DNA of 64,000 nucleotides from Macrostomum lignano (taxonomy: Eukaryota): NCBI GenBank assembly GCA_002269645.1, contig NIVC01003761.1:14191-78190 (forward strand), written 5' to 3'. The notes under the pieces are model-generated. The model saw nothing but the letters and a program-made list of their open reading frames with translations, did not search any database and was not told the DNA's origin. Each line of letters begins with the position of its first letter. Positions within the stretch are counted from its first letter, which is position 1. Position numbers and translations under genes: made by a program. Below are positions 1 to 55,544 of the stretch, piece by piece.

Positions 1-1457
1 CAGCTGGATAGAGGCCCGCATAAGATTGCGGGTGAGTCTCAGGAACGAGGGTATCTTGGCTGCTTCACGAAGGAGAACAGGGTAGATACCATCAGGTCCA
101 GGAGATTTGAAGGGTTTGAAGGTTCTGACCGCACGAGCGATTAGGTCTTCAGTGACAATGCCCGCCGCTAGGGTGGCTCCATCCATCGAATGGTTGGGCT
201 CCGGTCTAGCAGTAGGTACCCTCGGGAAGAATGTGCTAAGCATATGCTGAAGCACTTCTTCAGGGTCTTTAGTAAGAGAGCCATCATCTTTTTTGATCAT
301 GGCTAATTTGGACATTTTGTCCATTGTAAGGGCCTTGACAAGCCTAGAAGTAGGTCTGTCTTGATCCAATTCATTGCAGAATTGGCGCCACTTACATTCC
401 TTGGCCTTGCGCACTTCAGATTTGAAATTGCGGGAGGCTTGCCGGAAAAGCTCCATGTCCTCCGGGTTTCCGGTCTTCATGGCACGGCGATGAAGGCTTT
501 TGGCCTTCCGCCTGAGTTTCCCCAGCTCCGGGTTCCACCACGGCGCCGAGGTCTTGCCTTTGTAGGCGCGAGCAGGACAAGCCGCTTCGTAGGCTTCAAT
601 AATGCAACCTGTCAGCGTCTCAGCCATATGATCCACATCCTCGCAGGTCTCAATCGGACGTAAGTCCGTGAGTTCCTGCAGGTGCAGATCAAGGGCAGCC
701 TTGTAGGCCGCCCAATCAGTGTTGCGGATATTGCGTCTCCAAGTGATCGGAGACTGGGTTTTAGTGTCCGCGATGTTAAAGGCGATAAAGCAGTGGTCAG
801 ACAGGGAGGGCTCCTCAGACCAGACTCTCCACTCCTCAACTCTGTCAAAGAGTCTTGGGGTAACGAGTGTGGCGTCGAGGACCTCGTCCATCTGCCATTA
901 TTAAAGGTAGGAGTGCTGCCGCGGTTGCAGAGCATGAGGTTTGTGTTAGAGATGAGGGCCAGAAGCTCCTCTCCTCTAGTGTTGGTATCTTTGCTGCCCC
1001 AGTGCTTGTGGTGCGCGTTGAGGTCGCCCCCTAAGCACAGCTCAGCGTTCTGGGACTCGCAGTACTGCGCGAGGCGCAGTAAATTCTCAGGAGCAGGGTC
1101 TCTGTCGCCTGGGATATAAACCGAGGCAACAAGACACGTACGCGGAGAGAAATGATTAGATTGGATGACGCAAAGGTCTCCATCAGAGAGATCAGTCCTC
1201 AGCCAAGCCTGGAGATGGCTAGCAGCGAGGATAGCCGCTCTAGGGCGACTGTTCCCCGGGCCACACACATAAAAATCAGAGTAGCCAGAGGGAATGTTGG
1301 GCAACTTACTGTTGCGCATCCAGGGTTCCTGGATCAGGATGAGGCCTGGCCTGTACAGCTCAGCAATCTTCATCAGATTTACTGACGCAGATACGCAATG
1401 CTGTAAATTAATTTGCAGACAGAATGTCGCTCCTTTGGCAGCGTGGAGCTTAGTCAT
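1..1457 (-). CDS. LINE ORF2 (APE endonuclease-reverse transcriptase), partial, with one frameshift near 889
   Basis: ATG at 1457. Restoring one G in AGATGG(G)ACGAGGTC gives GRW-DEVLDATL and an open frame to position 1 ending in KSPGPDGIYPVLLREAAK. Confidence 0.88.
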
Positions 1458-7881: not shown

Positions 7882-9829
7882 ATGAACGGCGCCAGCAAGA
7901 ACCAAAGCCGCAGAAGGCGAAGGCTTCTATGGACAATTCTAAGAGTTCTCGGTTGGTCCGTGCTGGGAGCTGTCTGGTCTTACTGGCTAGTCGGCTCGTT
8001 GAAGTTGATGCACCAGACTGCAGATCCTGGACCGTCAACAACAAGGGAGCCCGACGAAGCCCAAGGCTGGCGACTCTATCAGTTCAACGAGTCAGCAAGT
8101 CGGCTGATTAGCCCCGATCGCGATATCGGAGATCCCAGATCCCAAGCGTGTCGATTAGCCGCTGACGGTGACAATGACGTCATAATGCCTCAAGCCTCTG
8201 TAATAATCTGCTTTCACAACGAAGCCTGGAGTGTACTGCTCAGAACTGTACACTCGGTGCTCAACAGGTCGCCGAGAGAATCAGTTGCCGAGATCCTTCT
8301 AGTAGACGACGCTTCGACATTGGAACATCTGGGAAAGCCACTTGAAGTACAGCTTAAGAAAGAGAGGTTTTCAGTTACTGATTGTTTTCATTGAACGCCC
8401 TACTGTGTTCGTGCTTTTACACTTTGCAGTGCACGAAAATTATTGTCCTGCGATTTGAGCGCCTTTAGAACCAACCCTCATGCACTGAATTGCAGAAAGC
8501 CAGAGATTTATGTTAGGGTTTGGTTAGTTTAAGTCTATAAAGGTAAAGGTTTAGATACGGACTTAAGTACCTAGGTAGGTAGCGGCTTATGTTAGGGCTT
8601 AATGACAATAATAATTTATTACACCTGTCCTAATGGGCAGATGTGCAACCGACAGCTCAGCCGCGGCTGAATTGCGCGGCGCATCTGAACGCTGCGTACG
8701 GCTGTTCAGTCCAAGGACTGGGGGTCGCCACTTCAATCCCCATTTACCCCAGCTAATGCTGGCACCCATTTTACAGCTGGGTGAACTGAAGCAATGCAGA
8801 GTTAAGTGTCTTGCTCAAAGACACAAAATGTTCCGAATGGGTCGAGAATCGAACCCCCGACCTTTCAGTCGTGAGTCCGACGCTCTAACCACTACGAGAG
8901 TAGGCTACAACCCCTCGGGTTGGGCTTAGGGGTTAAATTAGGGTTGAAATTTCGGTTGGGGCGTAAAGCCAACAAGGGAGTCAACTGCTGAGTAGTGTCA
9001 TGTAAGTGTCTACAAGTCAAATAAATGCTCGGCTGCCAAATTGGGGCAATAAAATGTCACGGCACCTTGCAGGTACGGCGGTAGAGTTCGCGTAATGCGC
9101 ACCGACACTCGTCAAGGTCTCATCCGGGCTCGTCTTCTGGGCGCTCGCGCCGCCAAAGCCGCTGCTCTGGTGTTCCTGGACTCGCATTGCGAGTGCGCAC
9201 CTGGCTGGCTGTCGCCTCTGCTACGCCGACTCGCCGTCAAACCTCTCGCCGTGGTGACCCCAGTCATTGCCACCATCGACGACAAGACATTTGAGTTCAG
9301 GCCTCCGCCTCGAACGTTCTTTCTAATCGGCAGTTTCGACTGGACATTGCAGTTTGTCTGGCGACGGCTGAGACCGAGGCCACCGCTGAACAGCACCGAG
9401 CCGGTGGCCAGTCCCACCATGGCTGGCGGCCTGTTTGCCATCATGCGAGCCAATTTCTACCGCCTAGGCGGCTATGATCCCGGATTCAACGTCTGGGGCG
9501 CCGAGAATCTCGAGCTAAGCTTCAAAGCCTGGATGTGCGGCGGCAGAGTAGAGATCCACCCCTGCTCAATAGTTGGTCACGTGTTTCGGCACAAGTTTCC
9601 GTACAGCTTCGGCAATAACGGAGGCGATACGTTTCGTAGGAATACGGCTAGACTAGCTCGGGTGTGGATGGACGGCTACGCAAGGATGCACTACCGACAA
9701 GGCGGGCCTCCACCGGCTGATATTGGCGACGTGTCTGACAGAGTAGCCCTGCGGCAGCGGCTGCGCTGTCACAGTTTTGATTGGTACGTGCGGACAGTCT
9801 ATCGTCCGGAGCCGAGGAGTACGCGTTGA
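7882..9829 (+). CDS. GALNT: Polypeptide N-acetylgalactosaminyltransferase (GT27), 2 exons, about 413 aa, no ricin lectin domain seen
   Basis: Exons 7882-8366 and 9073-9829 (AG|GTTTTC ... TTGCAG|G, phase 2). N-terminal TM; motifs SVIICFHNEAWSVLLRTVHSV, LVDDAS, GLIRARLLGA, DSHCE, PTMAGGLFA, WGAENLE, GHVFR. Confidence 0.93.
8604..8916 (-). mobile_element. tRNA-derived SINE, family 1, copy 1 (in GALNT intron)
   Basis: On the - strand: A-box-like GTAGTGGTTAGAGC, B-box GGTTCGATTC, central TGTGTCTTTGAGCAAGACACTTAACTC..CAGCTGTAAAATGGG, (AAT)n-type tail. Homologous to 41475-41715 and 47773-48080. Confidence 0.88.
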
Positions 9830-10552
9830 TAAGGCAAACTAATGACTATATTGAAATCATACTTGATGCTTTGTAGCCCACAGAGATGAATAGTGAGGAC
9901 AAGGAAGACGGGAAAACTAGAAAGGCCAAAGAAAGGTCGGCCATTGGCAGACAGGCGATTCTCAAGTTTTTGGAGTTGTTCTTCAAGTCCTTTCAAGAGT
10001 ATTCGCATGATTGTGACTTGGTAAGATGATTACTTCACGTAGGCCCACGTTAAAGAGTAACATTTTAACACTCTTATACTGCTTAAGTAAGTTTGGCGTA
10101 CGATTATTGCTTTAATAGATTAAGTAAAGTACACAAAGTGAAGGAACTTTATGAAAAGTTTGTAATCAAATTATAAAAGTTTGAGGACTGCAAAAACTGG
10201 TTTCGGCATTTTGTATTTAATACATGTTAAAACAAAATTAGATAGTTTGAAATGCAACCAACTATAGTCATTGTGTGTCAGGTTTAGAATATTTAAAAAA
10301 AACTACAAATATCGTAGATTCTGCACTGCATTCAGAATATTCAATTTCTATGAAAAACTTTCAATTGAAAAAACCAATTCAACTATAAAAGATTGGAACA
10401 CATCAAAACATCTGCTGCTAAATATATACTTCAAAATTATGATACGAAATTATTGAAATGCACTTTACAGACGAGACTTAGGAAAACTCTTGATTTCAAA
10501 GCACAAAATTATTGGGCTTCAGAAGCCTTATCAGTACGTCAGCATCCATCTT

Positions 10553-11292
10553 TACACCAGCACCCACCCCATCAGTACACTAGCACCCACCCCATCAATA
10601 CACCAGCACCCACCCCATCAGTACACCAGCACCCACCATCAGTACACCAGCACCCACCCCATCAGTACACCAGCACCCACCATCAGTACACCAGCACCCA
10701 CCCCATCAGTACACCAGCACCCACCATCAGTACACCAGCACCCACCCCATCAGTACACCAGCACCCACCCCATCAGTACACCAGCACCCACCATCAGTAC
10801 ACCAGCACCCACCATCAGTACACCAGCACCACCATCAGTACAGCAGCACCCACCATCAGTACAGCAGCACCCACCATCAGTACACCAGCACCACCATCAG
10901 TACAGCAGCACCCACCATCAGTACAGCAGCACCCACCATCAGTACACCAGCACCCACCATCAGTACAGCAGCACCCACAATCAGTACAGCAGCACCCAAC
11001 CATCAGTACACCAGCACCACCATCAGTACACCAGCACCAACCATCAGTACAGCAGCACCCACAATCAGTACAGCAGCACCCAACCATCAGTACACCAGCA
11101 CCACCATCAGTACACCAGCACCAACCATCAGTACACCAGCACCCACCATCAGTACACCAGCACCAACCATCAGTACACCAGCACCCACCATCAGTACACC
11201 AGCACCCACCATCAGTACACCAGCACCCACCATCAGTACACCAGCACCCACCATCAGTACACCAGCACCCACCATCAGTACACCAGCACCCA
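10553..11292. repeat. About 21-bp minisatellite (CCATCAGTACACCAGCACCCA)n, about 35 units, overlapping the ESCO stop codon
   Basis: Directly visible. The reverse complement TGG GTG CTG GTG TAC TGA TGG equals the last codons and stop of the ESCO ORF. Confidence 0.97.
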
Positions 11293-12795
11293 CTCGTCCC
11301 CGCCGACATAGTCTCTAGCTAGCAGATAGCCGCTAGGACTGGGCGAGCAGAATGCCACGCGTTTTCTATCGGGCAGCAGGCCCGGACACAGAGCCTGGCG
11401 AGCCGCGTCCAGCAGGGCCGTCGCCACGCCAGTTCGTCGCTGATCTGAACGACACCAGATCTGGTAGATGCCGCATGAGGCTGGCACGAGAATCTCGGAT
11501 TGATAGTAAGCTAGTGGTGGACTTCTGGACTTTACAATTTGATCCAACTCTCCATTACAGTTTCCGACATTGATGTTTCCGTCGAAACTTCCGGTACCAG
11601 CATCTCCAATGCAACTTCCGGTACCAGCATCTCCAATGCAACTTCCGGTACCAGCATCTCCAATGCAACTTCCGGTGCCAGCATCTCCAATGCAACTTCC
11701 GGTACCAGCATCTCCAATGCAACTTCCGGTACCAGCATCTCCAATGCAACTTCCGGTACCAGCATCTCCAATGCAACTTCCGGTACCAGCATCTCCAATG
11801 CAACTTCCGGTACCAGCATCTCCAATGCAACTTCCGGTACCAGCATCTCCAATGCAACTTCCGGTGCCAGCATCTCCAATGCAACTTCCGGTACCAGCAT
11901 CTCCAATGCAACTTCCGGTACCAGCATCTCCAATGCAACTTCCGGTGCCAGCATCTCCAATGCAACTTCCGGTACCAGCATCTCCAATGCAACTTCCGGT
12001 ACCAGCATCTCCAATGCAACTTCCGGTACCAGCATCTCCAATGCAACTTCCGGTACCAGCATCTCCAATGCAACTTCCGGTACCAGCATCTCCAATGCAA
12101 CTTCCGGTACCAGCATCTCCAAAGCAACTTCCGGTACCAGCATCTCCAATGCAACTTCCGGTACCAGCATCTCCAATGCAATTTCCGGCGCCTAAATCCT
12201 TACGGAGTCCAGAATTACTTCCGGTGCTGATAGCATTTCTCGTTCCAGCGTTTTTATCGTTTCCGCCAGGCAGAGCAATCCGATAAGCTCGCCGAATCGG
12301 CTCAACCAAGCAGCAGCCGACGATACCGCAGCCCGGCCGGACAAACATCAGCGCCAGCCGGTCGGGAAGTCCGGCCTCTCGCCAGCAGGTCACGTCGTTG
12401 TCGTCCTCGAGGTCGCCGGCTCCGACGCCAGCCAGGTCGCGTCGCATCAGACGAACGGCGGCGAGCTCGGCGGCCGATGGACGACAATCATTGCCGATAC
12501 GAACAATTCTGTCGCCGTTGAAAAACGCTTTCACAATTGGTCGACGCTCGCGCCAAAGAGTTTTGTTATAATCGACGTAGGCGTCTAGTCGGTTGCTATG
12601 GAAACGAAGGTGTTTTTGCACGTCGGACGAGCGAGCGGCTGAGTAGATCATGCCGCACTGATTGCACGATTCGAGTCCCGGACTGCGGCTGCGACCTGTA
12701 GGACTCGAGCGGCAGGTTCGTTGCTCAAGCTGCATACGTCTTCGAGTCATCTTACCATGAGTAGATAAGGCCCGTTGAGATCGAGACGAGTGCAT
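11275..12795 (-). CDS. eco1: Eco1/ESCO cohesin acetyltransferase (C2H2 zinc finger plus GNAT domain); 506 aa unspliced or about 275 aa if 12203-11511 is an intron; 5' end uncertain
   Basis: CNQCGMIYS..DVQKHLRFH zinc finger; GCCLVEPI..AYR; PASCGIYQIW..RRTGVATALLD; VAFCSPSPSG..ARDY..VLVY* match the ESCO C-terminus. Confidence 0.92.
   Translation of the reverse strand: MHSSRSQRALSTHGKMTRRRMQLEQRTCRSSPTGRSRSPGLESCNQCGMIYSAARSSDVQKHLRFHSNRLDAYVDYNKTLWRERRPIVKAFFNGDRIVRIGNDCRPSAAELAAVRLMRRDLAGVGAGDLEDDNDVTCWREAGLPDRLALMFVRPGCGIVGCCLVEPIRRAYRIALPGGNDKNAGTRNAISTGSNSGLRKDLGAGNCIGDAGTGSCIGDAGTGSCFGDAGTGSCIGDAGTGSCIGDAGTGSCIGDAGTGSCIGDAGTGSCIGDAGTGSCIGDAGTGSCIGDAGTGSCIGDAGTGSCIGDAGTGSCIGDAGTGSCIGDAGTGSCIGDAGTGSCIGDAGTGSCIGDAGTGSCIGDAGTGSCIGDAGTGSCIGDAGTGSCIGDAGTGSCIGDAGTGSFDGNINVGNCNGELDQIVKSRSPPLAYYQSEILVPASCGIYQIWCRSDQRRTGVATALLDAARQALCPGLLPDRKRVAFCSPSPSGYLLARDYVGGDEWVLVY
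11585..12190. repeat. 27-bp minisatellite (CCGGTACCAGCATCTCCAATGCAACTT)n, about 22 units, inside the ESCO ORF
   Basis: Directly visible. Encodes GDAGTGSCI in the ESCO frame. Confidence 0.98.
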
Positions 12796-13042
12796 TACAA
12801 CTTTGCTGCAAACAGTAAAACAACTTTTGTGTTATTCCCAATTCTGCAGCAGCTCTCTGGCTAAAAGACAATCATGTAGAGAATTTAAAACTGCACGTAT
12901 GTTAGTGTATTCTAGTCGCAGAACTTCATTGATTTGCTGTCTAATTTTTATTTTAAATTTGGGATAGAGAATTTCAAATGAAAACTCAACGACTACTCAA
13001 GTAGAAGGACGACAAACTATGTTAATTCTTAGACAAAATTAA

Positions 13043-34400: not shown

Positions 34401-37400
34401 ACAGGTAGGGTAGCGGTGCTCAAACTGAATTACAGGTAGGGTAGCGGTGCTCAAACTGAATTACAGGTAGGGTAGCAGTGCTCAAACTGAATTACAGGTA
34501 GGGTAGCGGTGCTCAAACTGAATTACAGGTAGGGTAGCGGTGCTCAAATTGAATTACAGGTAGGGTAGCGGTGCTCAAACTGAATTACAGGTAGGGTAGC
34601 GGTGCTCAAACTGAATTACAGGTAGGGTAGCGGTGCTCAAATTGAATTACAGGTAGGGTAGCGGTGCTCAAATTGAATTACAGGTAGGGTAGCGGTGCTC
34701 AAATTGAATTACAGGTAGGGTAGCGGTGCTCAAACTGAATTACAGGTAGGGTAGCGGTGCTCAAATTGAATTACAGGTAGGGTAGCGGTGCTCAAATTGA
34801 ATTACAGGTAGGGTAGCGGTGCTCAAATTGAATTACAGGTAGGGTAGCGGTGCTCAAATTGAATTACAGGTAGGGTAGCGGTGCTCAAATTGAATTACAG
34901 GTAGGGTAGCGGTGCTCAAATTGAATTACAGGTAGGGTAGCGGTGCTCAAATTGAATTACAGGTAGGGTAGCGGTGCTCAAATTGAATTACAGGTAGGGT
35001 AGCGGTGCTCAAATTGAATTACAGGTAGGGTAGCGGTGCTCAAATTGAATTACAGGTAGGGTAGCGGTGCTCAAATTGAATTACAGGTAGGGTAGCGGTG
35101 CTCAAATTGAATTACAGTTAGGGTAGCGGTGCTCAAACTGAATTACAGGTAGGGTAGCGGTGCTCAAATTGAATTACAGGTAAGGTAGCGGTGCTCAAAT
35201 TGAATTACAGGTAGGGTAGCGGTGCTCAAATTGAATTACAGGTAGGGTAGCGGTGCTCAAATTGAATTACAGGTAGGGTAGCGGTGCTCAAATTGAATTA
35301 CAGGTAGGGTAGCGGTGCTCAAATTGAATTACAGGTAGGGTAGCGGTGCTCAAACTGAATTACAGGGAGGGTAGCGGTGCTCAAACTGAAGGACAGGTAG
35401 GGTAGCGGTGCTCAAACTGAATGGCAGGGAGGGAAGGGCTGCTCAAACTGAATGATCTCTATACGTACAGCTTCAGAGTACTTAGCAGCACAAAAGTACC
35501 CCCTAAGTGTTCGAATTTCACTTCATCGACACTGAAAAGTTTTTAAAGCTCTTGCTCTGGTTTGCGTTGCGACATAAAAAAACAATTTATTGGCTATTTT
35601 ATTCTCTGTTTTAAAGCAGCAATTAGTGGCTGGAGCACAGGCTACTTAAGCTTAAACCGCAAAGACGATTCAATTAACTGCGTTCGATCATAAAAGCTGA
35701 AATTATTGCTGCCAATTCCACGATTTCAGTTCCCACGCTGCACAATTTACCTGAGCGGCGAGCAGCGTTCGAACGGAGACGGAGTTCGCTACATCTGCAA
35801 CGGCGGCCGCTGGGTCACTCTGGCTAGCGTGGTCCAGTCTCAACGCCAGCCTCACCGCGGCTTCGGTTCCGCTACTGATAGGCAATCTCAAACTCCTGCC
35901 GCAGAGGACAAGACGATGATCAACTGCCCAACGGGTAGGGCTGCGGTTCTCTGAAAATATATTTGAAATTTTTTTTGTGGGTTCATATCGGTTATTTATG
36001 GTTTAGGGTAGCTTTTACGCGTAGCAGGGACGGTCGCGTCCTTGAAGGGCGCCATTTCGATTGAGAGGGGGCGCCATTTGGGTTGAGAGGGGGCGCCATT
36101 TGGGTTGAGAGGGGGCGCCATTTGGGTTGAGAGGGGTGCCGTTTGGGTTGAAAGGGGGCGCCGTTTGGGTTGAAAGGGGGCGCCGTTTGGGTTGAAAGGG
36201 GGCGCCATTTGGGTTGAGAGGGGCGCCATTTGGGTTGAGAGGGTCACCATTTGGGTTGAGAGGGGTGCCGTTTGGGTGGAGAGGGGGTGCCATTTTGATT
36301 GAGAGGGGCGCCATTTGGGTTGAGAGGGGGCGCCGTTTGGGTTGAGAGGGGGCACCGTTTGTGTTGAGATGGAGCACCATTAGCACCAGAGGCTTAAACA
36401 CCAGGGGCGCCAGCACCAGGGGCGCCAGCACCAGGGGCGCCAGCACCAGGGGCGCCAGCACCAGGGGCGCCAGCACCAGGGGCGCCAGCACCAGGGGCGC
36501 CAGCACCAGGGGCGCCAGCACCAGGGGCGCCAGCACCAGGGGCGCCAGCACCAGGGGCGCCAGCACCAGGGGCGCCAGCACCAGGGGCGCCAGCACCAGG
36601 GGCGCCAGCACCAGGGGCGCCAGCACCAGGGGCGCCAGCACCAGGGGCGCCAGCACCAGGGGCGCCAGCACCAGGGGCGCCAGCACCAGGGGCGCCAGCA
36701 CCAGGGGCGCCAGCACCAGGGGCGCCAGCACCAGGGGCGCCAGCACCAGGGGCGCCAGCACCAGGGGCGCCAGCACCAGGGGCGCCAGCACCAGGGGCGC
36801 CAGCACCAGGGGCGCCAGCACCAGGGGCGCCAGCACCAGGGGCGCCAGCACCAGGGGCGCCAGCACCAGGGGCGCCAGCACCAGGGGCGCCAGCACCAGG
36901 GGCGCCAGCACCAGGGGCGCCAGCACCAGGGGCGCCAGCACCAGGGGCGCCAGCACCAGGGGCGCCAGCACCAGGGGCGCCAGCACCAGGGGCGCCAGCA
37001 CCAGGGGTGCAACTAGCACTCCAGAATCACCTCCATCTGAATCCCGCAGGCTGGACAGCCAAGTCAGGCCTCTCCTGCGTTCGCCTATTCAAGGCGCGGC
37101 TCAGCTTCACTGCAGCGACCGCCGAGTGCGCCAAGTACGGAGCCCGCCTCTTGGAGCTGGGCAGCGCAGCTGATGCGCGCTGGATTCGCAAGAATCTGCG
37201 TACCAGAAAGCGCTATTGGATTGGTGAGCGCTGGATTGGTTTCGCTTTGCAAGAATTTGTCGCTATTCTTTAATGGGTGATTTGCTAGAACCCACACGCT
37301 AGAACCCACACGCTAGAATTCCCACACGCAAGAACCCACACACAAGAACCCACACGCAAGAACCCACACGCTAGAATCCACATGCTAGAACCCACTCGCT

Positions 37401-38699
37401 AGAACTCCCACACGCTAGAACCCACTCGCTAGAACCCACTCGCTAGAACTCCCACACGCTAGAACCCACTCGCTAGAACCCACTCGCTAGAACCCACTCG
37501 CTAGAACCCACTCGCTAGAACTCCCACACGCTAGAACCCACTCTCTAGAACCCACATGATAGAACCCACTCTCTAGAACCCACACGATAGAACCCACTCT
37601 CTAGAACCCACACGATAGAACCCACTCTCTAGAACCCACACGATAGAACCCACTCTCTAGAACCCACACGATAGAACCCACTCTCTAGAACCCACACGAT
37701 AGAACCCACTCTCTAGAACCCACTCGCTAGAACCCACTCGCTAGAACCCACTCGCTAGAACCCACTCTCTAGAACCCACACGATAGAACCCACTATCTAG
37801 AACCCACACGATAGAACCCACTCTCTAGAACCCACACGATAGAACCCACTCTCTAGAACCCACACGATAGAACCCACTCTCTAGAACCCACACGATAGAA
37901 CCCACTCTCTAGAACCCACACGATAGAACCCACTCTCTAGAACCCACACGATAGAACCCACTCTCTAGAACCCACACGATAGAACCCACTCTCTAGAACC
38001 CACTCGCTAGAACCCACTCGCTAGAACCCACTCGCTAGAACCCACTCTCTAGAACCCACACGATAGAACCCACTATCTAGAACCCACACGATAGAACCCA
38101 CTCTCTAGAACCCACACGATAGAACCCACTCTCTAGAACCCACACGATAGAACCCACTCTCTAGAACCCACACGATAGAACCCACTCTCTAGAACCCACA
38201 CGATAGAACCCACTCTCTAGAACCCACTCGCTAGAACCCACTCGCTAGAACCCACTCGCTAGAACCCACTCGCTAGAACCCACTCGCTAGAACCCACATG
38301 CTAGAACCCACACCCCACCATCATTAAGGTCTCTACCGCGGCAAAGACGGCCGCTGGCGCCAGCCGAGCGGCGAGGACGTTGCCTCAGCTCTGGCTGGCG
38401 GCCTCCGCTGGGCCCGCGGACACCCTCGTCGACGTGCCGATTGCGCTTTCGTCCACCGCAATCGCTGGCTGAAAAGTCGCCGATGCCGCCTGAGCCAGTC
38501 GAAGCCGAAAAATAAAAGTCGTGCCGGTCGTCGTCAAAGTCGTCGTCATCGTCGTCGTCGTCAACGACTTCAAAGACGAAGTCGACTAAAGCAGCGACCG
38601 GGTCGTCGAGCCGACTGGGCGGCGCCCTACGTGTGCCAGCTGACCGTGCGCTATAAACTTAGCAGACGGGCCTATGTGAACCTCGTCAGGAGCAACTGA
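25488..38699 (+). CDS. FREM1: FRAS1-related extracellular matrix protein 1-like (signal peptide, CSPG/cadherin-like repeats, Calx-beta, C-type lectin), 8 exons, about 2316 aa
   Basis: Exons 25488-25754, 26005-28493, 30239-33123, 33219-33466, 33830-34141, 35730-35934, 37050-37223, 38329-38699; all phases consistent. Motifs [44 protein letters not shown], Calx-beta LNFNPG, C-type lectin CPTGW..C..C..WIGL..W..C..W..C..YVCQ. Confidence 0.9.
33515..33612 (+). mobile_element. Fragment of SINE family 2 (homologous to about 63333-63432), in FREM1 intron 4
   Basis: Shared GAGTG.GTGCCTG..GGGGTCAGCGGAATGG..AATG..CGC..GTTGTG.GAC.AT..GC.AGGGTGC. Confidence 0.6.
34226..35452. repeat. 31-bp minisatellite (GGTGCTCAAAYTGAATTACAGGTAGGGTAGC)n, about 39 units (FREM1 intron 5)
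   Basis: Directly visible. Confidence 0.98.
36047..36368. repeat. 21-22-bp degenerate minisatellite (GGCGCCATTTGGGTTGAGAGGG)n (FREM1 intron 6)
   Basis: Directly visible, about 15 units. Confidence 0.95.
36399..37010. repeat. 15-bp minisatellite B (GCGCCAGCACCAGGG)n, about 41 units (FREM1 intron 6)
   Basis: Directly visible. It differs from array A by one base per unit. Confidence 0.98.
37284..38312. repeat. 14-bp minisatellite (CTAGAACCCACWCK)n with 28-bp dimer and 280-bp higher-order block (FREM1 intron 7)
   Basis: Directly visible. The variant CACTATCTAG occurs at 37791 and 38071. Confidence 0.97.
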
Positions 38700-46213: not shown

Positions 46214-49200
46214 ATGCTGCCAATCATTTCTCGACTGCTGCTTGTCAGCATTCTGACGATCTTGGTAAGTTCAATACTTTCTGAACTTAATCGACGATGC
46301 TACTGTAAAAAGCGTGTCACGTTGTGTCATCCTGCAGCTAAGCATCGCACCAGCGCATTGCGACGCGACCACCAGCGAAGCGGTGAAATCGATCAACACA
46401 TTCGAATACAACTGGGCAGAGGTTGAGAAAAAGAATTCCAAAGGAGTGGAATTCTCGGTGAGTGTATGTCTCTTGATGGCGAAACTTCATTCAAAGAGCA
46501 AATCTTTTCAAAACCTGTGGAGAAACAGAAACTGTATCTTCGAATAAAATTTCCAGCAATATCTTTTTAAATAGATAGTGCATCTCCACACATACACGAG
46601 TCCAGTTTTTACTCAAGTTACGCTTGTTGAAAATCTGAATATTCAACAAGGACTACTCGATGCTAGAGACCGGAAACTACAAAAATCCGATCCATTCATA
46701 ACTTTGTGTTTGAAAATAATTGATAGTTTTTAACCAGAGAATAGCGAGTATACATACTTTATACTTTATTTAAATACTTGGTAAATGAACTTTTTGGCCA
46801 TAGACATTGAGTTTTAGCAGTTTAAGCTATCATGCACAGTTTTTCACCATGCTTTCATTAAACTCGAAATGTCTATGGCCAAAGAGTATAGAGTCCCGGA
46901 AGGAACGAAAATCAGCTTCACTTTAGACCCTTCTATTGGTATTCTATGTATACTGGATATTCTCTGGTTTAAACTTGTAGCCAGTGAGTTTGTGTCTGTG
47001 GTACAAACCTATCAAAGCAATGCTTTTCGAGGACTAAGTCATTAATAAATCGGCATGTATCCCCCTTTTGCCCCGGGCGAGTGTCTATGTGACGCATGTT
47101 TTCATTTATTTCCCTAGGTGAATAAATCATTTATTTCCCGCTGCCCCGCGGGCTGCTAAATTCGAGACAACAACCATAGACAACGAACGGGGGATACATA
47201 TCATATTCCCCACTCATTTAGCTGTCTAGGGCCAAAAGCCCTTGTTCGAGCTAGTTTCCCGCAGTTACTAAATCACTAAGTGATAAGTACAAAGAAAGTT
47301 GTAGTAGCTAAATTGGATGGTTCACTCAACCATATTCTTCAAAACTACTCTCTGTTCCAGTAGTATGACAGGAAAAAGCAATATGTATTTATTCGACTAG
47401 CTCCACTACCTTGAAAGTGGCAAAGTTGCTTGCGTGTGACAGGAGCAGCTAGTCATCCTTTTCTCCAAAAATTAATCTCTAAACAAAAAATAGGGCAAAT
47501 ATACTCTTATGTCATTGCAATGAGAGCAGCAAGTAAAAATGACACTTTAAGATAGTGCTGAGTGAACCATCTGGTATATTTAGTATCTATGCTTGACTAA
47601 ATCAATTGAAACTTGACAGAAGCGCAGTTAAATTAATCTCGATCGTATCGATTTTATATGATGTCATAAAACCAGCTCATCGAATTTTTTAAATTATAGC
47701 TTCCCTCGACAAAGGATTCGAAATTCGATTGGACTCCAGGATCATTCGGACCTGTAAGTACAAGCGCCTATCGAATAATAATAATAATATAATTGATTAC
47801 ACCTGCCCCAATGGGGCCAGATGTGCAATCGACAGCTCAGCCTCAGCTATTGCGCGGCGCATCTGAAAGCTGCGTACGGCTGTTCAGTGAAAGGACTGGG
47901 GGGTCGCCACTCCCATCCCCGTTTACCCCAGCTAATCCAGGCATCCATTTTACAGCTGGGTGAACTGAAGCGATGCAGAATTAAGTGTCTTCTTTAAGGA
48001 CACAGATTGTTTCAGTGGGATCGGGAATCGAGCCCCGACCTTCAAGTCGTGAGTCCGACGCTCTAACCGCTAGGCTAAAACCCCACCCTAGGATACAACC
48101 CCTCCCTTGGCTACAACCCCTCCCTAGGCTACAACCCCTCCCTAGGCTACAACCCCTCCCTAGGCTACAACCCCTCCCTAGGCTACAACCCCTCCCTAGG
48201 CTACAACCCCTCCCTAGGCTACAACCCCTCCCTAGGCTACAACCCCTCCCTAGGCTACAACCCCTCCCTAGGCTACAACCCCTCCCTAGGCTACAACCCC
48301 TCCCTAGGCTACAACCCCTCCCTAGGCTACAACCCCTCCCTAGGCTACAACCCCTCCCTAGGCTACAACCCCTCCCTAGGCTACAACCCCTCCCTAGGCT
48401 ACAACCCCTCCCTAGGCTACAACCCCTCCCTAGGCTACAACCCCTCCCTAGGCTACAACCCCTCCCTAGGCTAAAACCCCTCCCTAGGCTACAACCCCTC
48501 CCTAGGCTACAACCCCTCCCTAGGCTACAACCCCTCCCTAGGCTACAACCCCTCCCTAGGCTACAACCCCTCCCTAGGCTACAGCCCGGCCTATCGAACT
48601 AGACTTTGTTACTATAGCAGGTTTAACTTATCGCACCCTGCAATTCACAGTGCTTCGGATGCGGGACTCGCAGCTATCGATACGTCAGTCACGACTGCGT
48701 CCACAGACTGCCAATCAATTTAACAGCTGATGCGGTTTCAAAGTAAGTTGAATGCTTGATCTGGCTGCGTACACAGGAGCTATTGTGCCTCGCTACGACT
48801 ATAACTAACACTGATTACCGACTTTTATTCCTTCTCAATCAGAACTCTAGTCGGCGTTTTCAAAGTCCCCGAAGAGGAGTGCACGCGCCGCAAGGGCGGC
48901 CCGCCAGCGCAGAGGACCTTGTTGGGCTGCGGCCCGCCCTGCAGTCAGCTGAGGCTGCTTCGAGGTGGACTGACCGGGGTAAGTACCTTCTCGGATTAGG
49001 AGTCATTAATCCGTTGCTTTTGAAATGATTTGTCGGTAGGTAGGTGTCTTGTGAAAAGTGAACCTTATCTTCCTCTTCAGCCTTAATTGCTAACTCAGTG
49101 GCATCAAAGAATGCTTTTTGTGTGCCAACCGAAATCAATTGAATTCCATGGGGTATGAATAGTTTTAGACCGCCGAATCCATTAATAAAATTTACATGAT

Positions 49201-52200
49201 CCTACTGCACAGTGTCGCTGTCTTCATGAGCGCAAACTAGCGTTCGACGTGCCGCGATTGACCTGCCAGGACACTCGCAACCGGTCGGTCAGCTTATCGT
49301 TGTGCCAAACAATCTACGAAAAAAGTACTCGATTGTACACCGCCGCCCCCTGTGAATTCGACGCTGTCTGCTCTCAGCCAAGCGAGTGGGTAGTTGGCAA
49401 TTGGACATTGTGCAGCGTGGACAGCCCCCAGTACCAAAATCGGGAGGTGGTCTGCGCCACTCGAGTACCAAACGGTGTTTACTTGATCATGCACGACTCA
49501 ATGTGCGTCAAGGCTGCCAGACCCGTGGCCAACAGATACTGCGCTCGCTGGGCTGCCGAGAAAAACTTCAAGGTGAGAACATTGAGATTTGTTACTGTGT
49601 CCTGAGATTACTGCGGGAGAGGCTTGTACTAGATTGAGGATATTGCGAGTACAAGAGCGAGGGGTGTACAGAACCGAGAATAGTACAAGAGTGAGGAGAA
49701 TACATGATTGAGAATAGTACAAGAGTGAGGAGAATACATGATTGAGAATAGTACAAGAGTGAGGAGAATACATGATTGAGAATAGTACAAGAGTGAGAAG
49801 AATACATGATGGAGAATAGTACAAGAGTGAGGAGAATACATGATTGAGAATAGTACAAGAGTGAGGAGAATACATGATGGAGAATACGAGTAGTACAAGA
49901 GTGAGTAGAATACATGATGGAGAATAGTACAAGAGTGAGGAGAATACATGATGGAGAATACGAGTAGTACAAGATTGAGTAGAATACATGATTGAGAATA
50001 GTACAAGAGTGAGGAGAATACATGATGGAGAATACGAGTAGTACAAGAGTGAGTAGAATACATGATGGAGAATAGTACAAGAGTGAGGAGAATACATGAT
50101 GGAGAATAGTACAAAAGTGAGGAGAATACATGATTGAGAATAGTACAAGAGTGAGGAGAATACATGATTGAGAATACGAGTAGTACAAGAGTGAGAAGAA
50201 TACATGATGGAGAATAGTACAAGAGTGGGGAGAATACATGATGGAGAATAGTACAAGAGTGAGGAGAATACATGATGGAGAATAGTACAAGAGTGAGAAG
50301 AATACATGATGGAGAATAGTACAAGAGTGGGGAGAATACATGTACATGATTGAGAATAGTACAGGAGAGAGGAGAATACATGATGGAGAATAGTACAAGA
50401 GTGAGGAGAATACATGATTGAGAATAGTACAAGAGTGAGGAGAATACATGATGGAGAATACGAGTAGTACAAGAGTGAGTAGAATACATGATGGAGAATA
50501 GTACAAGAGTGAGGAGAATACATGATGGAGAATACGAGTAGTACAAGATTGAGTAGAATACATGATTGAGAATAGTACAAGAGTGAGGAGAATACATGAT
50601 GGAGAATACGAGTAGTACAAGAGTGAGTAGAATACATGATGGAGAATAGTACAAGAGTGAGGAGAATACATGATGGAGAATAGTACAAAAGTGAGGAGAA
50701 TACATGATTGAGAATAGTACAAGAGTGAGGAGAATACATGATTGAGAATACGAGTAGTACAAGAGTGAGAAGAATACATGATGGAGAATAGTACAAGAGT
50801 GGGGAGAATACATGATGGAGAATAGTACAAGAGTGAGGAGAATACATGATGGAGAATAGTACAAAAGTGAGGAGAATACATGATTGAGAATAGTACAAGA
50901 GTGAGGAGAATACATGATTGAGAATACGAGTAGTACAAGAGTGAGAAGAATACATGATGGAGAATAGTACAAGAGTGGGGAGAATACATGATGGAGAATA
51001 GTACAAGAGTGAGGAGAATACATGATGGAGAATAGTACAAGAGTGAGAAGAATACATGATGGAGAATAGTACAAGAGTGGGGAGAATACATGATGGAGAA
51101 TAGTACAAGAGTGAGGAGAATACATGATGGAGAATAGTACAAGAGTGAGGAGAATACATGATGGAGAATAGTACAAGAGTGAGGAGAATACATGATAGCG
51201 AATAGTACAAGAGTGGGGAGAATACATGATGGAGAATAGTACAAGAGTGAGGAGAATACATGATGGAGAATAGTACAAGAGTGAGGAGAATACATGATGG
51301 AGAATAGTACAACAGTGAGGAGAATACATGATGGAGAATAGTACAGGAGTGAGGAGAATACATGATGGAGAATAGTACAAAAGTGAGGAGAATACATGAT
51401 GGAGAATAGTACAAAAGTGAGGAGAATACATGATGGAGAATAGTACAGGAGTGAGGAGAATACATGATGGAGAATAGTACAAAAGTGAGGAGAATACATG
51501 ATGGAGAATAGTACAAGAGTGAGGAGAATACATGATTGAGAATAGTACAAGAGTGAGGAGAATACATGATTGAGAATAGTACAAGAGTGAGAAGAATACA
51601 TGATGGAGAATAGTACAAGAGTGAGGAGAATACATGATTGAGAATAGTACAAGAGTGAGGAGAATACATGATGGAGAATACGAGTAGTACAAGAGTGAGT
51701 AGAATACATGATGGAGAATAGTACAAGAGTGAGGAGAATACATGATGGAGAATACGAGTAGTACAAGATTGAGTAGAATACATGATTGAGAATAGTACAA
51801 GAGTGAGGAGAATACATGATGGAGAATACGAGTAGTACAAGAGTGAGTAGAATACATGATGGAGAATAGTACAAGAGTGAGGAGAATACATGATGGAGAA
51901 TAGTACAAAAGTGAGGAGAATACATGATTGAGAATAGTACAAGAGTGAGGAGAATACATGATTGAGAATACGAGTAGTACAAGAGTGAGAAGAATACATG
52001 ATGGAGAATAGTACAAGAGTGGGAGAATACATGATGGAGAATAGTACAAGAGTGAGGAGAATACATGATGGAGAATAGTACAAGAGTGAGAAGAATACAT
52101 GATGGAGAATAGTACAAGAGTGGGGAGAATACATGTACATGATTGAGAATAGTACAGGAGAGAGGAGAATACATGATGGAGAATAGTACAAGAGTGAGGA

Positions 52201-55200: not shown

Positions 55201-55544
55201 GGGTGAGAATACATGATGAGAATAGTACAAGAGTGAGGAGAATACATGATTGAGAATAGTACAAGAGTGAGGAGAATACATGACATAGTACAAGGAGTAG
55301 TTACTAGTAGCAGGAAATCGCATCAGTTTTATTTATTACAGAAATTCTAACCAAGACGCCCTAACCACACCCTATTCAGTGCAAGTGCTCAGACTACATA
55401 GCCAGACGGATCGTGATTTGCATGCGCGGCCGCAGGGGAAGCAGGAAGCCGGTACCGGAGTTCAACTGTAACTGGCACGACAAGCCCCTTGCAATGCGAT
55501 ACTGCACCGAGTCGGAGAGGTCCGAATGCAGGAGGCGTCGTTGA
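46214..55544 (+). CDS. Small secreted protein with degenerate ADAMTS-type thrombospondin-1 repeats, 7 exons, about 325 aa
   Basis: Exons 46214-46264, 46338-46457, 47700-47753, 48651-48742, 48843-48978, 49213-49572, 55380-55544; all GT-AG with consistent phases. Signal peptide MLPIISRLLLVSILTILLSIAPAHC; FDWTPGSFGPC, EWVVGNWTLCS..QNREVVC..C..RPVANRYC, RRIVIC..VPEFNC..KPLAMRYC. Confidence 0.72.
47773..48080 (-). mobile_element. tRNA-derived SINE, family 1, copy 3 (TSP1-gene intron 3)
   Basis: Full-length similarity to copy 1, including the (AAT)n tail and the GCGGTTAGAGCGTCGGACTCACGAC head. Confidence 0.88.
48071..48583. repeat. 18-bp minisatellite (TAGGCTACAACCCCTCCC)n, about 28 units, continuous with the SINE 5' end
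   Basis: Directly visible. Confidence 0.98.
49676..55285. repeat. 34-bp satellite (GAGAATAGTACAAGAGTGAG-GAGAATACATGATG)n, about 160 units, 5.6 kb, with higher-order structure (TSP1-gene intron 6)
   Basis: Directly visible. Rare variants recur about 1.79 kb apart (CATGTACAT at 50339 and 52132; GATAGCGAAT near 51195 and 52986). Confidence 0.98.

What the first reader, a model, noticed from the sequence alone, without database searches (positions are those of the whole stretch)
11511..12203. Repeat-filled, frame-preserving candidate intron (exitron) inside the ESCO catalytic domain
Seen: the 27-bp array is bracketed on the - strand by CTCC|GTAAGG (12203) and CCACCACTAG|CT (11511). The interval is 693 nt (231 codons), phases match and there is no stop. 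Splicing shortens the segment between AYR and PASCG to about 35 aa, close to the loop length I recall in human ESCO1/2. Retention inserts 231 Gly-rich residues (GDAGTGSCI x about 22). The non-repeat ends of the interval look coding and resemble the unit. Inference: an exonic tandem expansion being converted into an intron (intron birth in progress), or a regulated switch between two acetyltransferase isoforms.
Basis: partly seen in the sequence, partly recalled or inferred. Interest (0 to 1): 0.78.

Follow-up and report, generated by a model that had tools for sequence, protein, structure and literature searches.

The report
In-frame minisatellite in flatworm ESCO gene
A very young 27-bp tandem repeat has expanded in frame inside the substrate-binding hairpin of a cohesin acetyltransferase (ESCO/Eco1) gene copy of a repeat-riddled Macrostomum flatworm genome; the GT...AG around it is weak and close to chance, so it is most likely an ordinary coding repeat expansion, not a new intron.

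Summary
On the minus strand, a 693-nt stop-free phase-1 interval (12203..11511) starts with GTAAGG and ends with CTAG. It holds 22 copies of a 27-bp unit, 17 of them exact. It lies inside one 506-aa ORF that is clearly ESCO/Eco1 (zinc finger, Acetyltransf_13, xEco2-like fold). The host is Macrostomum (lignano or a close relative). Tandem arrays fill about 28% of this window.

The array sits at the tip of the "central beta hairpin", which in xEco2 binds Smc3.

The intron or exitron reading cannot be tested without RNA, and the sequence leans against it:
- The donor scores lower than every well-supported real donor and lower than 8 of 9 unused GTRAG motifs in the window's coding sequence.
- The acceptor has two out-of-frame AGs within 14 nt upstream; five reference acceptors have none within 15 nt.
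- Unit-like sequence continues upstream of the donor, in the same codon phase.
- An equally good in-frame bracket arises in 5-7% of shuffles, and a better-looking one lies at 12755..12696 in the same ORF.
- A homology-supported repeat-filled intron in this window (C-type lectin gene) looks different: period 28, with stops.

Best reading: a translated in-frame minisatellite in a divergent ESCO paralogue (about 0.6). Alternative splicing as an exitron is about 0.17, an ordinary intron about 0.07. Interest is modest.

The parts
11275..12795 (-). Uninterrupted 506-aa ORF of a divergent ESCO/Eco1-family acetyltransferase paralogue (stop codon 11275-11277)
   Evidence: ORF list. Pfam zf-C2H2_3 and Acetyltransf_13. 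PDB sequence hits ESCO1, ESCO2 and xEco2. The AF2 model matches xEco2 at target TM 0.74-0.79.
12806..12820 (-). T-rich tract plus CAG (TTTTACTGTTTGCAG|) 10 nt upstream of the ATG. Probably a 3' splice or trans-splice acceptor that marks the gene start (inferred).
   Evidence: Sequence. Trans-splicing affects about 39% of M. lignano genes (PMC5730564).
12595..12684 (-). ESCO zinc finger (res. 38-67; CNQC...HLRFH)
   Evidence: Pfam PF13878, 29.2 bits. C44, C47 and H62 are invariant in the alignment.
12204..12288 (-). End of strand beta4 (AYR) and the first part of the hairpin loop (IALPGGNDKNAGTRNAISTGSNSGL). Already G/N/S/T-rich; holds the unit-like 18-mer at 12225-12208 and the in-phase GGAA motifs at 12264, 12246 and 12222.
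12213..12218 (-). Second in-phase donor-like site, GAA|GTAATT. It is the one that, applied to the window sequence, reproduces the public M. lignano gene model.
12198..12203 (-). Proposed donor TCC|GTAAGG (phase 1). It lies between two degenerate unit copies.
   Evidence: Rough PWM score 2.9 bits.
11584..12177 (-). 27-bp minisatellite: 22 in-register units (17 exact, 5 with one mismatch) encoding IGDAGTGSC
11530..11583 (-). Two degenerate units in 27-nt register with the array (DGNINVGNC, NGELDQIVK)
11511..11530 (-). Proposed acceptor region GTCCAGAAGTCCACCACTAG|. Two upstream AGs (CCAG| and GAAG|) are out of phase with the donor.
11497..11511 (-). AYYQS (res. [quoted passage not shown]
   Evidence: HMMER alignment to ESCO2. 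Hairpin residues W623/C625 in xEco2 (PMC5349539).
11287..11487 (-). Acetyltransf_13 core (res. 437-503: beta5 PASCGIYQIW, acetyl-CoA motif RRTGVA, C-terminal LVY)
10546..11293 (-). Second minisatellite (21 bp x 35). Its first unit is the native C-terminus plus stop (W V L V Y *), so it fills the start of the 3' UTR.

Best explanation
The interval is a young, in-frame coding minisatellite, not an intron.

A short G-(N/S/T)-rich degenerate repeat already formed the tip of the central beta hairpin (between beta4 ...AYR and beta5 PASCG...) of a divergent ESCO/Eco1 paralogue in Macrostomum. One 27-nt version of that repeat then expanded by slippage or unequal exchange to 22 near-identical copies. 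The same mutational process has filled about 28% of this window with arrays. It also seeded a 21-bp array on this gene's own stop codon.

Because the period is 9 codons and the unit has no stop, the ORF stays open. The mRNA is most likely translated into an ESCO protein carrying about 200 extra Gly-rich residues extruded from the hairpin tip. This is tolerated because the tip is solvent-exposed and variable in length, and because a second ESCO paralogue with a short hairpin exists. The GTAAGG...CTAG pair is an incidental cryptic pair.

Shown: the anatomy, the ESCO identity, the position in the fold, the exonic origin of the unit, and the weakness of the splice signals.
Inferred: that the array is translated and tolerated, and that no appreciable splicing occurs.
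For: - One ORF spans the zinc finger, the array and the catalytic core. No other intron interrupts the 825 nt of homologous coding sequence.
- The unit is homologous to coding sequence upstream of the proposed donor: an exact 9-mer ACCGGAAGT at 12225, p about 0.014.
- All six GGAA motifs in the unique loop flanks, on both sides of the donor, are in the unit's codon phase. I estimate the chance of that at about (1/3)^5.
- There is no compositional break at the donor. GC is 0.49 in the loop exon part, 0.50 in the 5' unique part and 0.52 in the unit, against 0.59-0.61 in the conserved parts.
- The donor scores 2.9 bits on a rough PWM, against 5.9-12.3 for the five well-supported real donors. Nine GTRAG motifs, two of them the same GTAAGG hexamer, lie in homology-supported coding sequence of the window. 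Eight of them score above the proposed donor.
- The acceptor has AGs at -11 and -14, both out of frame. Five reference acceptors have none within 15 nt.
- Chance of such a bracket is 5-7%. A second, better in-frame GT-AG interval lies at 12755..12696 in the same ORF.
- The homology-supported repeat-filled intron of the C-type lectin gene (about 37227-38333) has a period of 28 and immediate stops after TTG|GTGAGC.
- AF2 folds the two halves of the ESCO core around the insert (core pLDDT 80-87). Foldseek gives target TM 0.74-0.79 to xEco2.
- The hairpin loop varies from 19 to 66 aa in homologues.
- M. lignano has a second paralogue, PAA58562.1, with a 19-aa loop.
- Simple and tandem repeats make up 15% of the M. 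lignano genome (PMC5730564).
Against: - No RNA or protein evidence was available, so translation of the array is inferred.
- The insert sits in an element that binds the Smc3 substrate; deleting that element abolishes yeast Eco1 function (PMC5349539). A 231-residue insert there could be harmful, which would favour removal by splicing.
- The spliced loop length (34 aa) is much closer to the family norm than 265 aa.
- A GTRAG donor in the 91-nt flank is only a 5-8% event by chance. Together with the open frame, this is what an exitron would look like.
- Interval GC is intermediate between exons and introns, as reported for exitrons (PMC4484396).
- One real acceptor in this window (CCACCATCATTAAG|, C-type lectin intron) is also C/A-rich without a T run. 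The acceptor's composition alone therefore does not disqualify it.
Confidence: 0.6

Rival explanations
1. Exitron or nascent intron. The array is exonic in origin, but a fraction of transcripts is spliced from GTAAGG (12203), or from GTAATT (12218), to CTAG (11511). This restores an ESCO protein with a normal-length hairpin, so two isoforms coexist.
For: - GT-AG bounded, 3n, stop-free, inside a coding ORF.
- GC is lower than in the flanking conserved coding sequence and higher than in most local introns. The interval encodes low-complexity sequence. These are the exitron features listed in PMC4484396.
- Two in-phase donors exist.
- Splicing would restore a 34-aa loop in a functionally important hairpin.
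- The chance bracket probability is only 5-7%.
Against: - The donor is weaker than the well-supported real donors and most unused cryptic donors in the window.
- Two out-of-frame AGs lie in the zone where real acceptors here have none. If they were used the product would be frameshifted.
- Every unit also offers an in-phase TTGGAG| acceptor, so a clean single junction is not expected.
- The array is too young for splice signals to have been selected: 17 of 22 units are identical.
- Cryptic sites are rarely used (stated in PMC4484396).
- No transcript evidence.
Confidence: 0.17
2. Ordinary constitutive intron, possibly ancient, that became filled by a minisatellite like the C-type lectin intron in this window. 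Its open frame and 3n length would be coincidence.
For: - Minisatellite-filled introns exist here: about 37227-38333, 93% array.
- Introns average 1.1-1.4 kb, about 5 per gene, in M. lignano.
- The spliced loop length fits the family.
Against: - In-frame length plus 30 stop-free unique codons is roughly a 4% coincidence by my estimate (1/3 x about 0.14 x about 0.8).
- The 'intron' sequence is homologous, in codon phase, to the exon upstream of the donor.
- The exon side of the donor is TCC, whereas all six real donors end in G.
- The gene has no other intron.
- GC is higher than in most local introns.
Confidence: 0.07
3. The paralogue is under relaxed constraint or decaying, so both arrays are neutral debris in a gene that no longer needs to acetylate cohesin. 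Whether the array is spliced or translated is then functionally irrelevant.
For: - It lacks the conserved Q-x-x-LD-x-GQ motif before the zinc finger that the other six aligned ESCOs share.
- It is 43% identical to the other Macrostomum paralogue.
- Arrays hit both substrate-recognition elements, the hairpin and the edge of the C-terminal LVY extension.
- A short-hairpin paralogue exists.
Against: - The ORF is intact over 506 codons, with zinc ligands and the acetyl-CoA motif preserved.
- The copy behind UniProt A0A1I8FW91 is 98% identical (343/350). All 7 differences lie in the first 191 residues and none in the 66 aligned C-terminal core residues.
- At 43% identity to its paralogue it is old, so an open frame implies long purifying selection (inference).
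Confidence: 0.14

Closest known systems
In-frame coding tandem-repeat (minisatellite) expansions that add disordered or low-complexity inserts to exposed loops of conserved proteins (general phenomenon; see PMC12457776 on tandem repeats and indels in long exons)
   Same: The period is a multiple of 3 and the ORF is preserved. The unit derives from adjacent coding sequence. The insert sits in a length-variable surface loop. The copies are near-identical, so the array is young.
   Different: The host element is not a passive linker but the substrate-binding central beta hairpin of a cohesin acetyltransferase. Translation has not been shown.
Exitrons (Marquez et al. 2015, PMC4484396)
   Same: Lies inside a coding ORF, is GT-AG bounded, 3n and stop-free, has GC below the flanking exon sequence, and encodes low-complexity sequence.
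   Different: The defining evidence, coexisting spliced and retained transcripts, is missing. The donor is weaker than local cryptic sites. The acceptor has competing out-of-frame AGs. Exitrons described so far mostly trace to old coding sequence or lost introns, not to a fresh tandem expansion.
Minisatellite-filled spliceosomal intron of the C-type lectin gene in the same window (about 37227-38333)
   Same: A roughly 1-kb interval made almost entirely of one near-perfect array, bounded by GT...AG, with a C/A-rich acceptor context.
   Different: That intron has a 28-bp period (not 3n), in-frame stops straight after the donor, G at exon position -1 and no AG near the acceptor. Its removal is required to join the WIG|LYRGKDGRW lectin motif.
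ESCO1/ESCO2/Eco1 cohesin acetyltransferases (structures 5n1u, 5t53, 6sp0, 4mxe)
   Same: Zinc finger plus GNAT-type core with the family-specific hairpin between beta4 and beta5; C-terminal LVY.
   Different: The hairpin loop is 265 aa instead of about 20-30. There is no long N-terminal extension. The LD-x-GQ motif is missing. Asp of the FSDPT motif is replaced (FCSPS), as it also is in fungal Eco1 (FSQPT).

Membership tests
ESCO/Eco1 acetyltransferase family | C2H2-type ESCO zinc finger N-terminal to the catalytic domain | tested here: met
   PF13878 at 29.2 bits (cut-off 27), res. 38-67. C44, C47 and H62 are invariant in the 7-sequence alignment.
ESCO/Eco1 acetyltransferase family | Acetyltransf_13 catalytic core with the acetyl-CoA motif | tested here: met
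   PF13880 at 67.8 bits, E 7e-19, res. 437-503. RRTGVA aligns with RRKKIA of ESCO1.
ESCO/Eco1 acetyltransferase family | GNAT-like fold with the central beta hairpin between beta4 and beta5 | tested here: met
   The AF2 model core has pLDDT 80-87. The top 12 Foldseek hits are all xEco2, Esco2 or ESCO1, with target TM up to 0.79. The hairpin strands AYRI and AYYQS align to YRV and AWxCS. The model comes from a 7-sequence alignment, so the detail is low-confidence.
ESCO/Eco1 acetyltransferase family | Acetylates Smc3 K105/K106-equivalent lysines | not testable with these tools
   Needs a biochemical or genetic assay.
Exitron | Located inside a protein-coding exon, with canonical GT-AG, and no stop when retained | tested here: met
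Exitron | Both spliced and retained mRNA isoforms observed | not testable with these tools
   No transcript data are reachable. Exact look-ups found nothing for the 506-aa and 275-aa products or for 10 partial products. Other ORFs of the window are also absent from the collection, so this says nothing either way.
Exitron | Usable splice signals (donor, branch/polypyrimidine tract, acceptor) | tested here: inconclusive
   The donor scores 2.9 bits, below the five well-supported real donors (5.9-12.3) and below 8 of 9 unused GTRAG sites. The acceptor has 6/12 pyrimidines and two AGs within 14 nt. The PWM is a rough human-like matrix written from memory, not a Macrostomum model.
Constitutive spliceosomal intron | Sequence unrelated to coding sequence and free to accumulate stops and non-3n length | tested here: not met
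   The interval is 3n and stop-free. Its unit is homologous, in codon phase, to exon sequence upstream of the donor.
Constitutive spliceosomal intron | Intron at the same position in orthologues or paralogues | not tested
   Genomic loci of other ESCO genes could not be fetched: the search for homologous proteins returned only a slime-mould protein. The literature places human ESCO2 codon 521, which is in the hairpin loop, in exon 10. The exon 9/10 boundary could not be located.
Coding minisatellite | Period divisible by 3, frame preserved, unit derived from local coding sequence | tested here: met
Coding minisatellite | Repeat present in the mature mRNA and the protein | not testable with these tools
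   Needs cDNA or proteomics.

The most novel reading that the evidence does not exclude
An intron caught at birth. A minisatellite that expanded only recently inside the substrate-binding hairpin of a cohesin acetyltransferase is already removed, at least in part, as an in-frame exitron. The donor it uses lies in a degenerate copy of the repeat itself. The cell therefore makes both a canonical short-hairpin ESCO and a form carrying a roughly 200-residue Gly-rich nonapeptide-repeat module. AF2 draws that module as a regular beta-strand repeat, at low confidence.
Probability: 0.12. Interest if true: 0.7.

Novelty: new member of a known kind. Interest (0 to 1): 0.3.

Why it matters
If the array is simply translated, this is one more in-frame repeat expansion in a genome where such arrays are everywhere. 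Its only special point is the location. It sits in the ESCO-specific hairpin that positions Smc3 for acetylation, so it is a natural insertion experiment on that element.

If it is spliced, it would be a rare, datable example of intron or exitron origin from a tandem expansion, in an animal with transgenesis tools. One RT-PCR would test it.

For annotation, the locus shows how minisatellites derail gene models. The public UniProt model of the sister copy is a 3136-aa chimera. It reads part of the array out of frame and repairs the frame with two predicted introns.

Tried and rejected
- Protein searches. Three homologous-protein searches used the collapsed query, the full ORF and a 7-sequence ESCO profile. 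They returned nothing useful: a Gly-rich bacterial haemagglutinin and one slime-mould ESCO. Metazoan ESCO loci could therefore not be fetched, and intron positions in orthologues stay untested.\n- Exact look-ups. Look-ups of the 506-aa and 275-aa products, two other window ORFs and 10 guessed partial products (as would arise on short-read contigs broken at the arrays) all failed. This is uninformative, because nothing from this genome copy appears to be in the collection.\n- Representative search. The staggered-alignment trick for collapsing the repeat built a profile of the N-terminal 220 positions only. It still found the two Macrostomum proteins.\n- Withdrawn inference. I first read UniProt A0A1I8FW91 as showing a different copy number (9 units). 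Its ESCO part is reproduced exactly (343/350) from the window sequence by two predicted introns: 12218 to first exon nt 11830, and 11558 to first exon nt 11493. It therefore says nothing about copy number or real splicing.\n- Human ESCO2 exon boundaries. Literature searches only showed that codon 521 is in exon 10 and that an intron precedes c.1674.\n- Rfam. No RNA family hit anywhere in the window.\n- Rejected arguments. 'No stop codon' is not evidence of coding, since most frames of the unit are open. Acceptor pyrimidine content is not a discriminator, since a real acceptor here is equally poor.\n- AF2 repeat model. The regular beta-strand model of the array (pLDDT about 68) has no significant PDB match and may be a perfect-repeat artefact.
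Full report
WHAT IS THERE

On the minus strand a single ORF runs from ATG 12795 to TGA 11275 (506 aa). It carries the ESCO zinc finger (PF13878, res. 38-67) and the ESCO acetyltransferase core (PF13880, res. 437-503, E 7e-19). It aligns in two blocks with human ESCO1, mouse ESCO2 and Xenopus Eco2 from the PDB.

Between the two blocks lies a 27-bp tandem array. TRF reports 11586-12188, 22.3 copies, 98% matches and no indels. A pattern search finds 22 in-register units at 11584-12177, 17 exact and 5 with one mismatch, and none elsewhere in the window. In the ORF frame each unit reads IGDAGTGSC.

Removing it gives a 275-aa protein with ...SNSGL-P-YYQSEILVPASCG.

WHOSE GENOME, AND WHAT BACKGROUND

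The neighbouring ORFs are metazoan: a DEG/ENaC channel, a FREM-like CSPG-repeat protein, a GalNAc-transferase, an M13 peptidase and a LINE endonuclease.

A profile search of 1.84 billion representative proteins gave only two strong hits:
- UniProt A0A1I8FW91 of Macrostomum lignano, 421.8 bits.
- GenBank PAA58562.1 of M. lignano, a 286-aa ESCO paralogue, 69.9 bits.

The window is therefore M. lignano or a very close relative.

Twenty-two tandem arrays with periods of 4-34 bp cover about 17.7 kb, or 28% of the window. This is my sum of the coordinates. Simple and tandem repeats make up 15% of the M. lignano assembly, and transcripts overlapping repeat annotations were dropped from its GenBank annotation (PMC5730564). 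The array in ESCO is one product of a genome-wide mutational process.

WHERE THE ARRAY SITS IN THE PROTEIN

The segment between ...AYR (beta4) and PASCGIYQIW (beta5) is the 'central beta hairpin', which is unique to cohesin acetyltransferases. In xEco2 it forms part of the Smc3-peptide groove through V602, W623 and C625. Deleting it abolishes Smc3 acetylation in yeast (PMC5349539).

In the window protein AYRI aligns with YRV, and A429-Y-Y-Q-S433 aligns with A-W-x-C-S. The array is therefore inserted at the hairpin tip.

Loop length between the R of AYR and the P of PA.CG:

| Protein | Loop (aa) | Source |
|---|---|---|
| Window protein, array retained | 265 | |
| Window protein, interval spliced | 34 | |
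| Solved ESCO2 / ESCO1 | 22 / 31 | |
| Other Macrostomum paralogue | 19 | |
| Saccoglossus | 27 | |
| Plant homologue | 66 | |

AlphaFold2 on the full 506 aa used a 7-sequence alignment and gave mean pLDDT 60.9. It still assembles the ESCO core around the insert (core pLDDT 80-87). Foldseek returns only Eco2, ESCO2 and ESCO1 as significant matches, with target TM up to 0.79. The array itself is drawn as regular 7-residue strands with 2-residue turns at pLDDT about 68. It has no significant PDB match. I treat this as a possible artefact of modelling a perfect repeat.

ORIGIN OF THE ARRAY

The unique flanks are degenerate copies of the unit.
- Two copies follow the array in perfect 27-nt register (DGNINVGNC, NGELDQIVK).
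- One precedes it (LGAGNC).
- An 18-mer with an exact 9-mer match (ACCGGAAGT, p about 0.014) lies at 12225-12208. That is upstream of the proposed donor, in what would be exon 1.

All six GGAA motifs of the unique loop flanks, three upstream of the donor and three inside the interval, are in the same codon phase as the unit's ACC GGA AGT. The proposed donor GTAAGG therefore lies inside the repeat-derived zone, not at its edge.

GC content shows no step at the donor. It is 0.49 in the loop exon part, 0.50 in the 5' unique part, 0.52 in the unit and 0.43 in the 3' unique part. The conserved ESCO parts are at 0.59-0.61 and four local introns at 0.34-0.47.

It argues against an old ordinary intron.

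IS IT SPLICED?

No transcript evidence is reachable, so I compared the signals with what the same window offers.

Reference sites. The four FREM-like sites were placed from ORF ends and the CSPG-repeat consensus. The lectin and GalNAc-T junctions rest on domain continuity.
- Donors: TAG|GTAAGT (28493), CAG|GTTGGT (33124), AAG|GTAAAA (25754) and CAG|GTGAGT (33466) in the FREM-like gene; TTG|GTGAGC (37227) in the C-type lectin gene; and a less certain GAG|GTTTTC in the GalNAc-T gene.
- Acceptors: CAACTTTCAG|, CCCGTCCTATAG|, CCATCATTAAG|, CACCTTGCAG|, and the putative acceptor before the ESCO start codon, TACTGTTTGCAG|.

All six donors have G at exon position -1. The proposed site has TCC.

I scored donors with a rough human-like PWM written from memory, so it is only a ranking aid.

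| Site | Score (bits) |
|---|---|
| Proposed donor TCC\|GTAAGG | 2.9 |
| Second in-phase donor GAA\|GTAATT (12218) | 5.0 |
| Five well-supported real donors | 5.9-12.3 |
| Nine GTRAG motifs in homology-supported coding sequence | 2.9-11.0 (eight above 2.9) |

The nine coding-sequence motifs are evidently unused, because the homology runs across them. Two of them are the same GTAAGG hexamer inside one FREM exon.

The proposed acceptor has 6/12 pyrimidines. It also has two upstream AGs, CCAG| and GAAG|, at -14 and -11. Both are out of phase with the donor, so using them would frameshift the catalytic core. None of the five reference acceptors has an AG within 15 nt. Every unit also offers an in-phase TTGGAG| acceptor.

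Chance estimates:
- An in-frame GTRAG...AG bracket around the array arises in 5-7% of dinucleotide-preserving shuffles of the flanks.
- GTRAG occurs 1.05 times per kb in the window's coding sequence.
- The same ORF contains another in-frame, stop-free GT-AG interval (12755..12696, 60 nt). Its donor ATG|GTAAGA scores 8.8 bits and its acceptor is TCCTACAG|. Candidate 'exitrons' of this quality are therefore not rare here.

A CONTROL FROM THE SAME WINDOW

The C-type lectin gene has a homology-supported intron at about 37227-38333. Joining ...YWIG to LYRGKDGRW restores the WIGL...G.W lectin motif. Ninety-three percent of that intron is a 28-bp minisatellite.

Repeat-filled introns therefore do exist here. 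This one, however, has a non-3n period, a stop a few codons after the donor, G at -1 and a clean AG-free acceptor zone. The ESCO interval differs on each of these points. The control also shows that a C/A-rich acceptor without a T run can work, so I do not use pyrimidine content against the finding.

THE PUBLIC GENE MODEL

UniProt A0A1I8FW91 is a 3136-aa chimera that fuses ESCO with neighbouring genes and transposon parts. Its ESCO portion is reproduced from the window sequence at 343/350 identity by applying two predicted introns: GAA|GTAATT (12218) to GGAAG| inside the array (first exon nt 11830), and AAACT|GTAATG (11558) to TCCGAG| (first exon nt 11493). The last nine units are then read in another frame as ALEMLVPEV.

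This is an annotation artefact or a frameshift work-around. It is evidence neither for real splicing nor for a different copy number.

WEIGHING

- Ordinary intron: the 3n length and 30 stop-free unique codons are roughly a 4% coincidence by my estimate. The in-phase homology across the donor is unexpected. The gene has no other intron.
- Exonic origin: the bracket is a 5-8% coincidence. The question then becomes how often a pair this weak is used. General experience is 'rarely' (also stated in PMC4484396).
- In favour of splicing: the functional importance of the hairpin and the family-typical 34-aa spliced loop.

My estimates are:
- translated coding minisatellite with incidental GT-AG: about 0.6;
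- exitron or partial splicing: about 0.17;
- ordinary intron: about 0.07;
- the remainder on a paralogue so relaxed that the question is functionally moot.

On that last reading, this copy lacks the LD-x-GQ motif that precedes the zinc finger in the other six aligned ESCOs. Against it, the zinc ligands, the acetyl-CoA motif and the open frame are preserved, and the sister copy shows no change in the 66 aligned core residues.

COMPARISON AND NOVELTY

The interval behaves like any in-frame coding minisatellite inserted into a variable surface loop. It has the static sequence features of an exitron (PMC4484396), but the defining feature, two transcript forms, could not be tested. It fails the sequence expectations of an ordinary intron.

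I file it as a new member of a known kind. Its one distinctive point is the location in the ESCO-specific substrate-binding hairpin. A single RT-PCR or long-read cDNA experiment would settle it: 901 bp retained versus 208 bp spliced.

Noticed in passing
window 10546-11293 (-), overlapping the ESCO stop at 11275-11277: A 21-bp x 35 minisatellite begins inside the last codons of ESCO. Its unit TGGGTGCTGGTGTACTGATGG is the native C-terminus W-V-L-V-Y-stop. The 3' UTR therefore starts with dozens of copies of the gene's own stop-codon region. The conserved LVY is part of the substrate-binding C extension in xEco2.
   Followed up: partly
window 12696-12755 (-): A second in-frame, stop-free GT-AG interval (60 nt) lies in the ESCO N-terminus. 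Its consensus is better than the finding's (ATG|GTAAGA ... TCCTACAG|G). Removing it would delete KMTRRRMQLEQRTCRSSPT. I used it only as a control for how easily such brackets arise.
   Followed up: partly
window about 37227-38333 (+), array 37284-38313: The C-type lectin gene has an intron that is 93% a 28-bp minisatellite. Joining YWIG|LYRGKDGRW restores the lectin motif.
   Followed up: yes
window 36399-37007 (+): A perfect 15-bp array (40.6 copies, 100% identity) reads (PGAPA)n in the same open frame as the downstream C-type lectin exon. A strong acceptor-like site (CATCTGAATCCCGCAG|G, about 37046) lies between them, so it is unclear whether the array is coding or intronic.
   Followed up: no
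whole window: Twenty-two tandem arrays (periods 4-34 bp, many 95% or more identical) cover about 17.7 kb, or 28% of the window. They include a 5.6-kb 34-bp array at 49648-55283 with extreme GC and AT skew.
   Followed up: partly
window 8800-8935 (+) and 47960-48110 (+); array 48070-48587: A tRNA-derived SINE-like element in the GalNAc-T intron has a second copy (79% mean column identity in the alignment) immediately upstream of the 18-bp array. The array unit CTAGGCTACAACCCCTCC is the element's own tail. This is another array seeded from local sequence.
   Followed up: partly
UniProt A0A1I8FW91 (P0001) versus window 11275-12795: The public M. lignano model is a 3136-aa chimera fusing ESCO with neighbouring genes, other arrays (SGAGA repeats) and reverse-transcriptase-like sequence. 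Its ESCO part reads nine repeat units out of frame between two predicted introns.
   Followed up: yes
window 11584-12177 (-), protein res. 207-404: AlphaFold2 models the GDAGTGSCI nonapeptide array as a regular strand-turn repeat (7-residue strands, pLDDT about 67-72). A full-ORF search hit a bacterial filamentous-haemagglutinin-family protein at E 1e-6. Either a beta-solenoid-like propensity or an artefact of modelling a perfect repeat.
   Followed up: partly
window 8367-9071 (+): The only frame-compatible donor for the GalNAc-transferase intron is the very poor GAG|GTTTTC. Either splice donors here can be highly degenerate or a small exon was missed.
   Followed up: no
window 612-1457 (-): A LINE-type endonuclease ORF (Exo_endo_phos_2) lies at the window's left end.
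   Followed up: no
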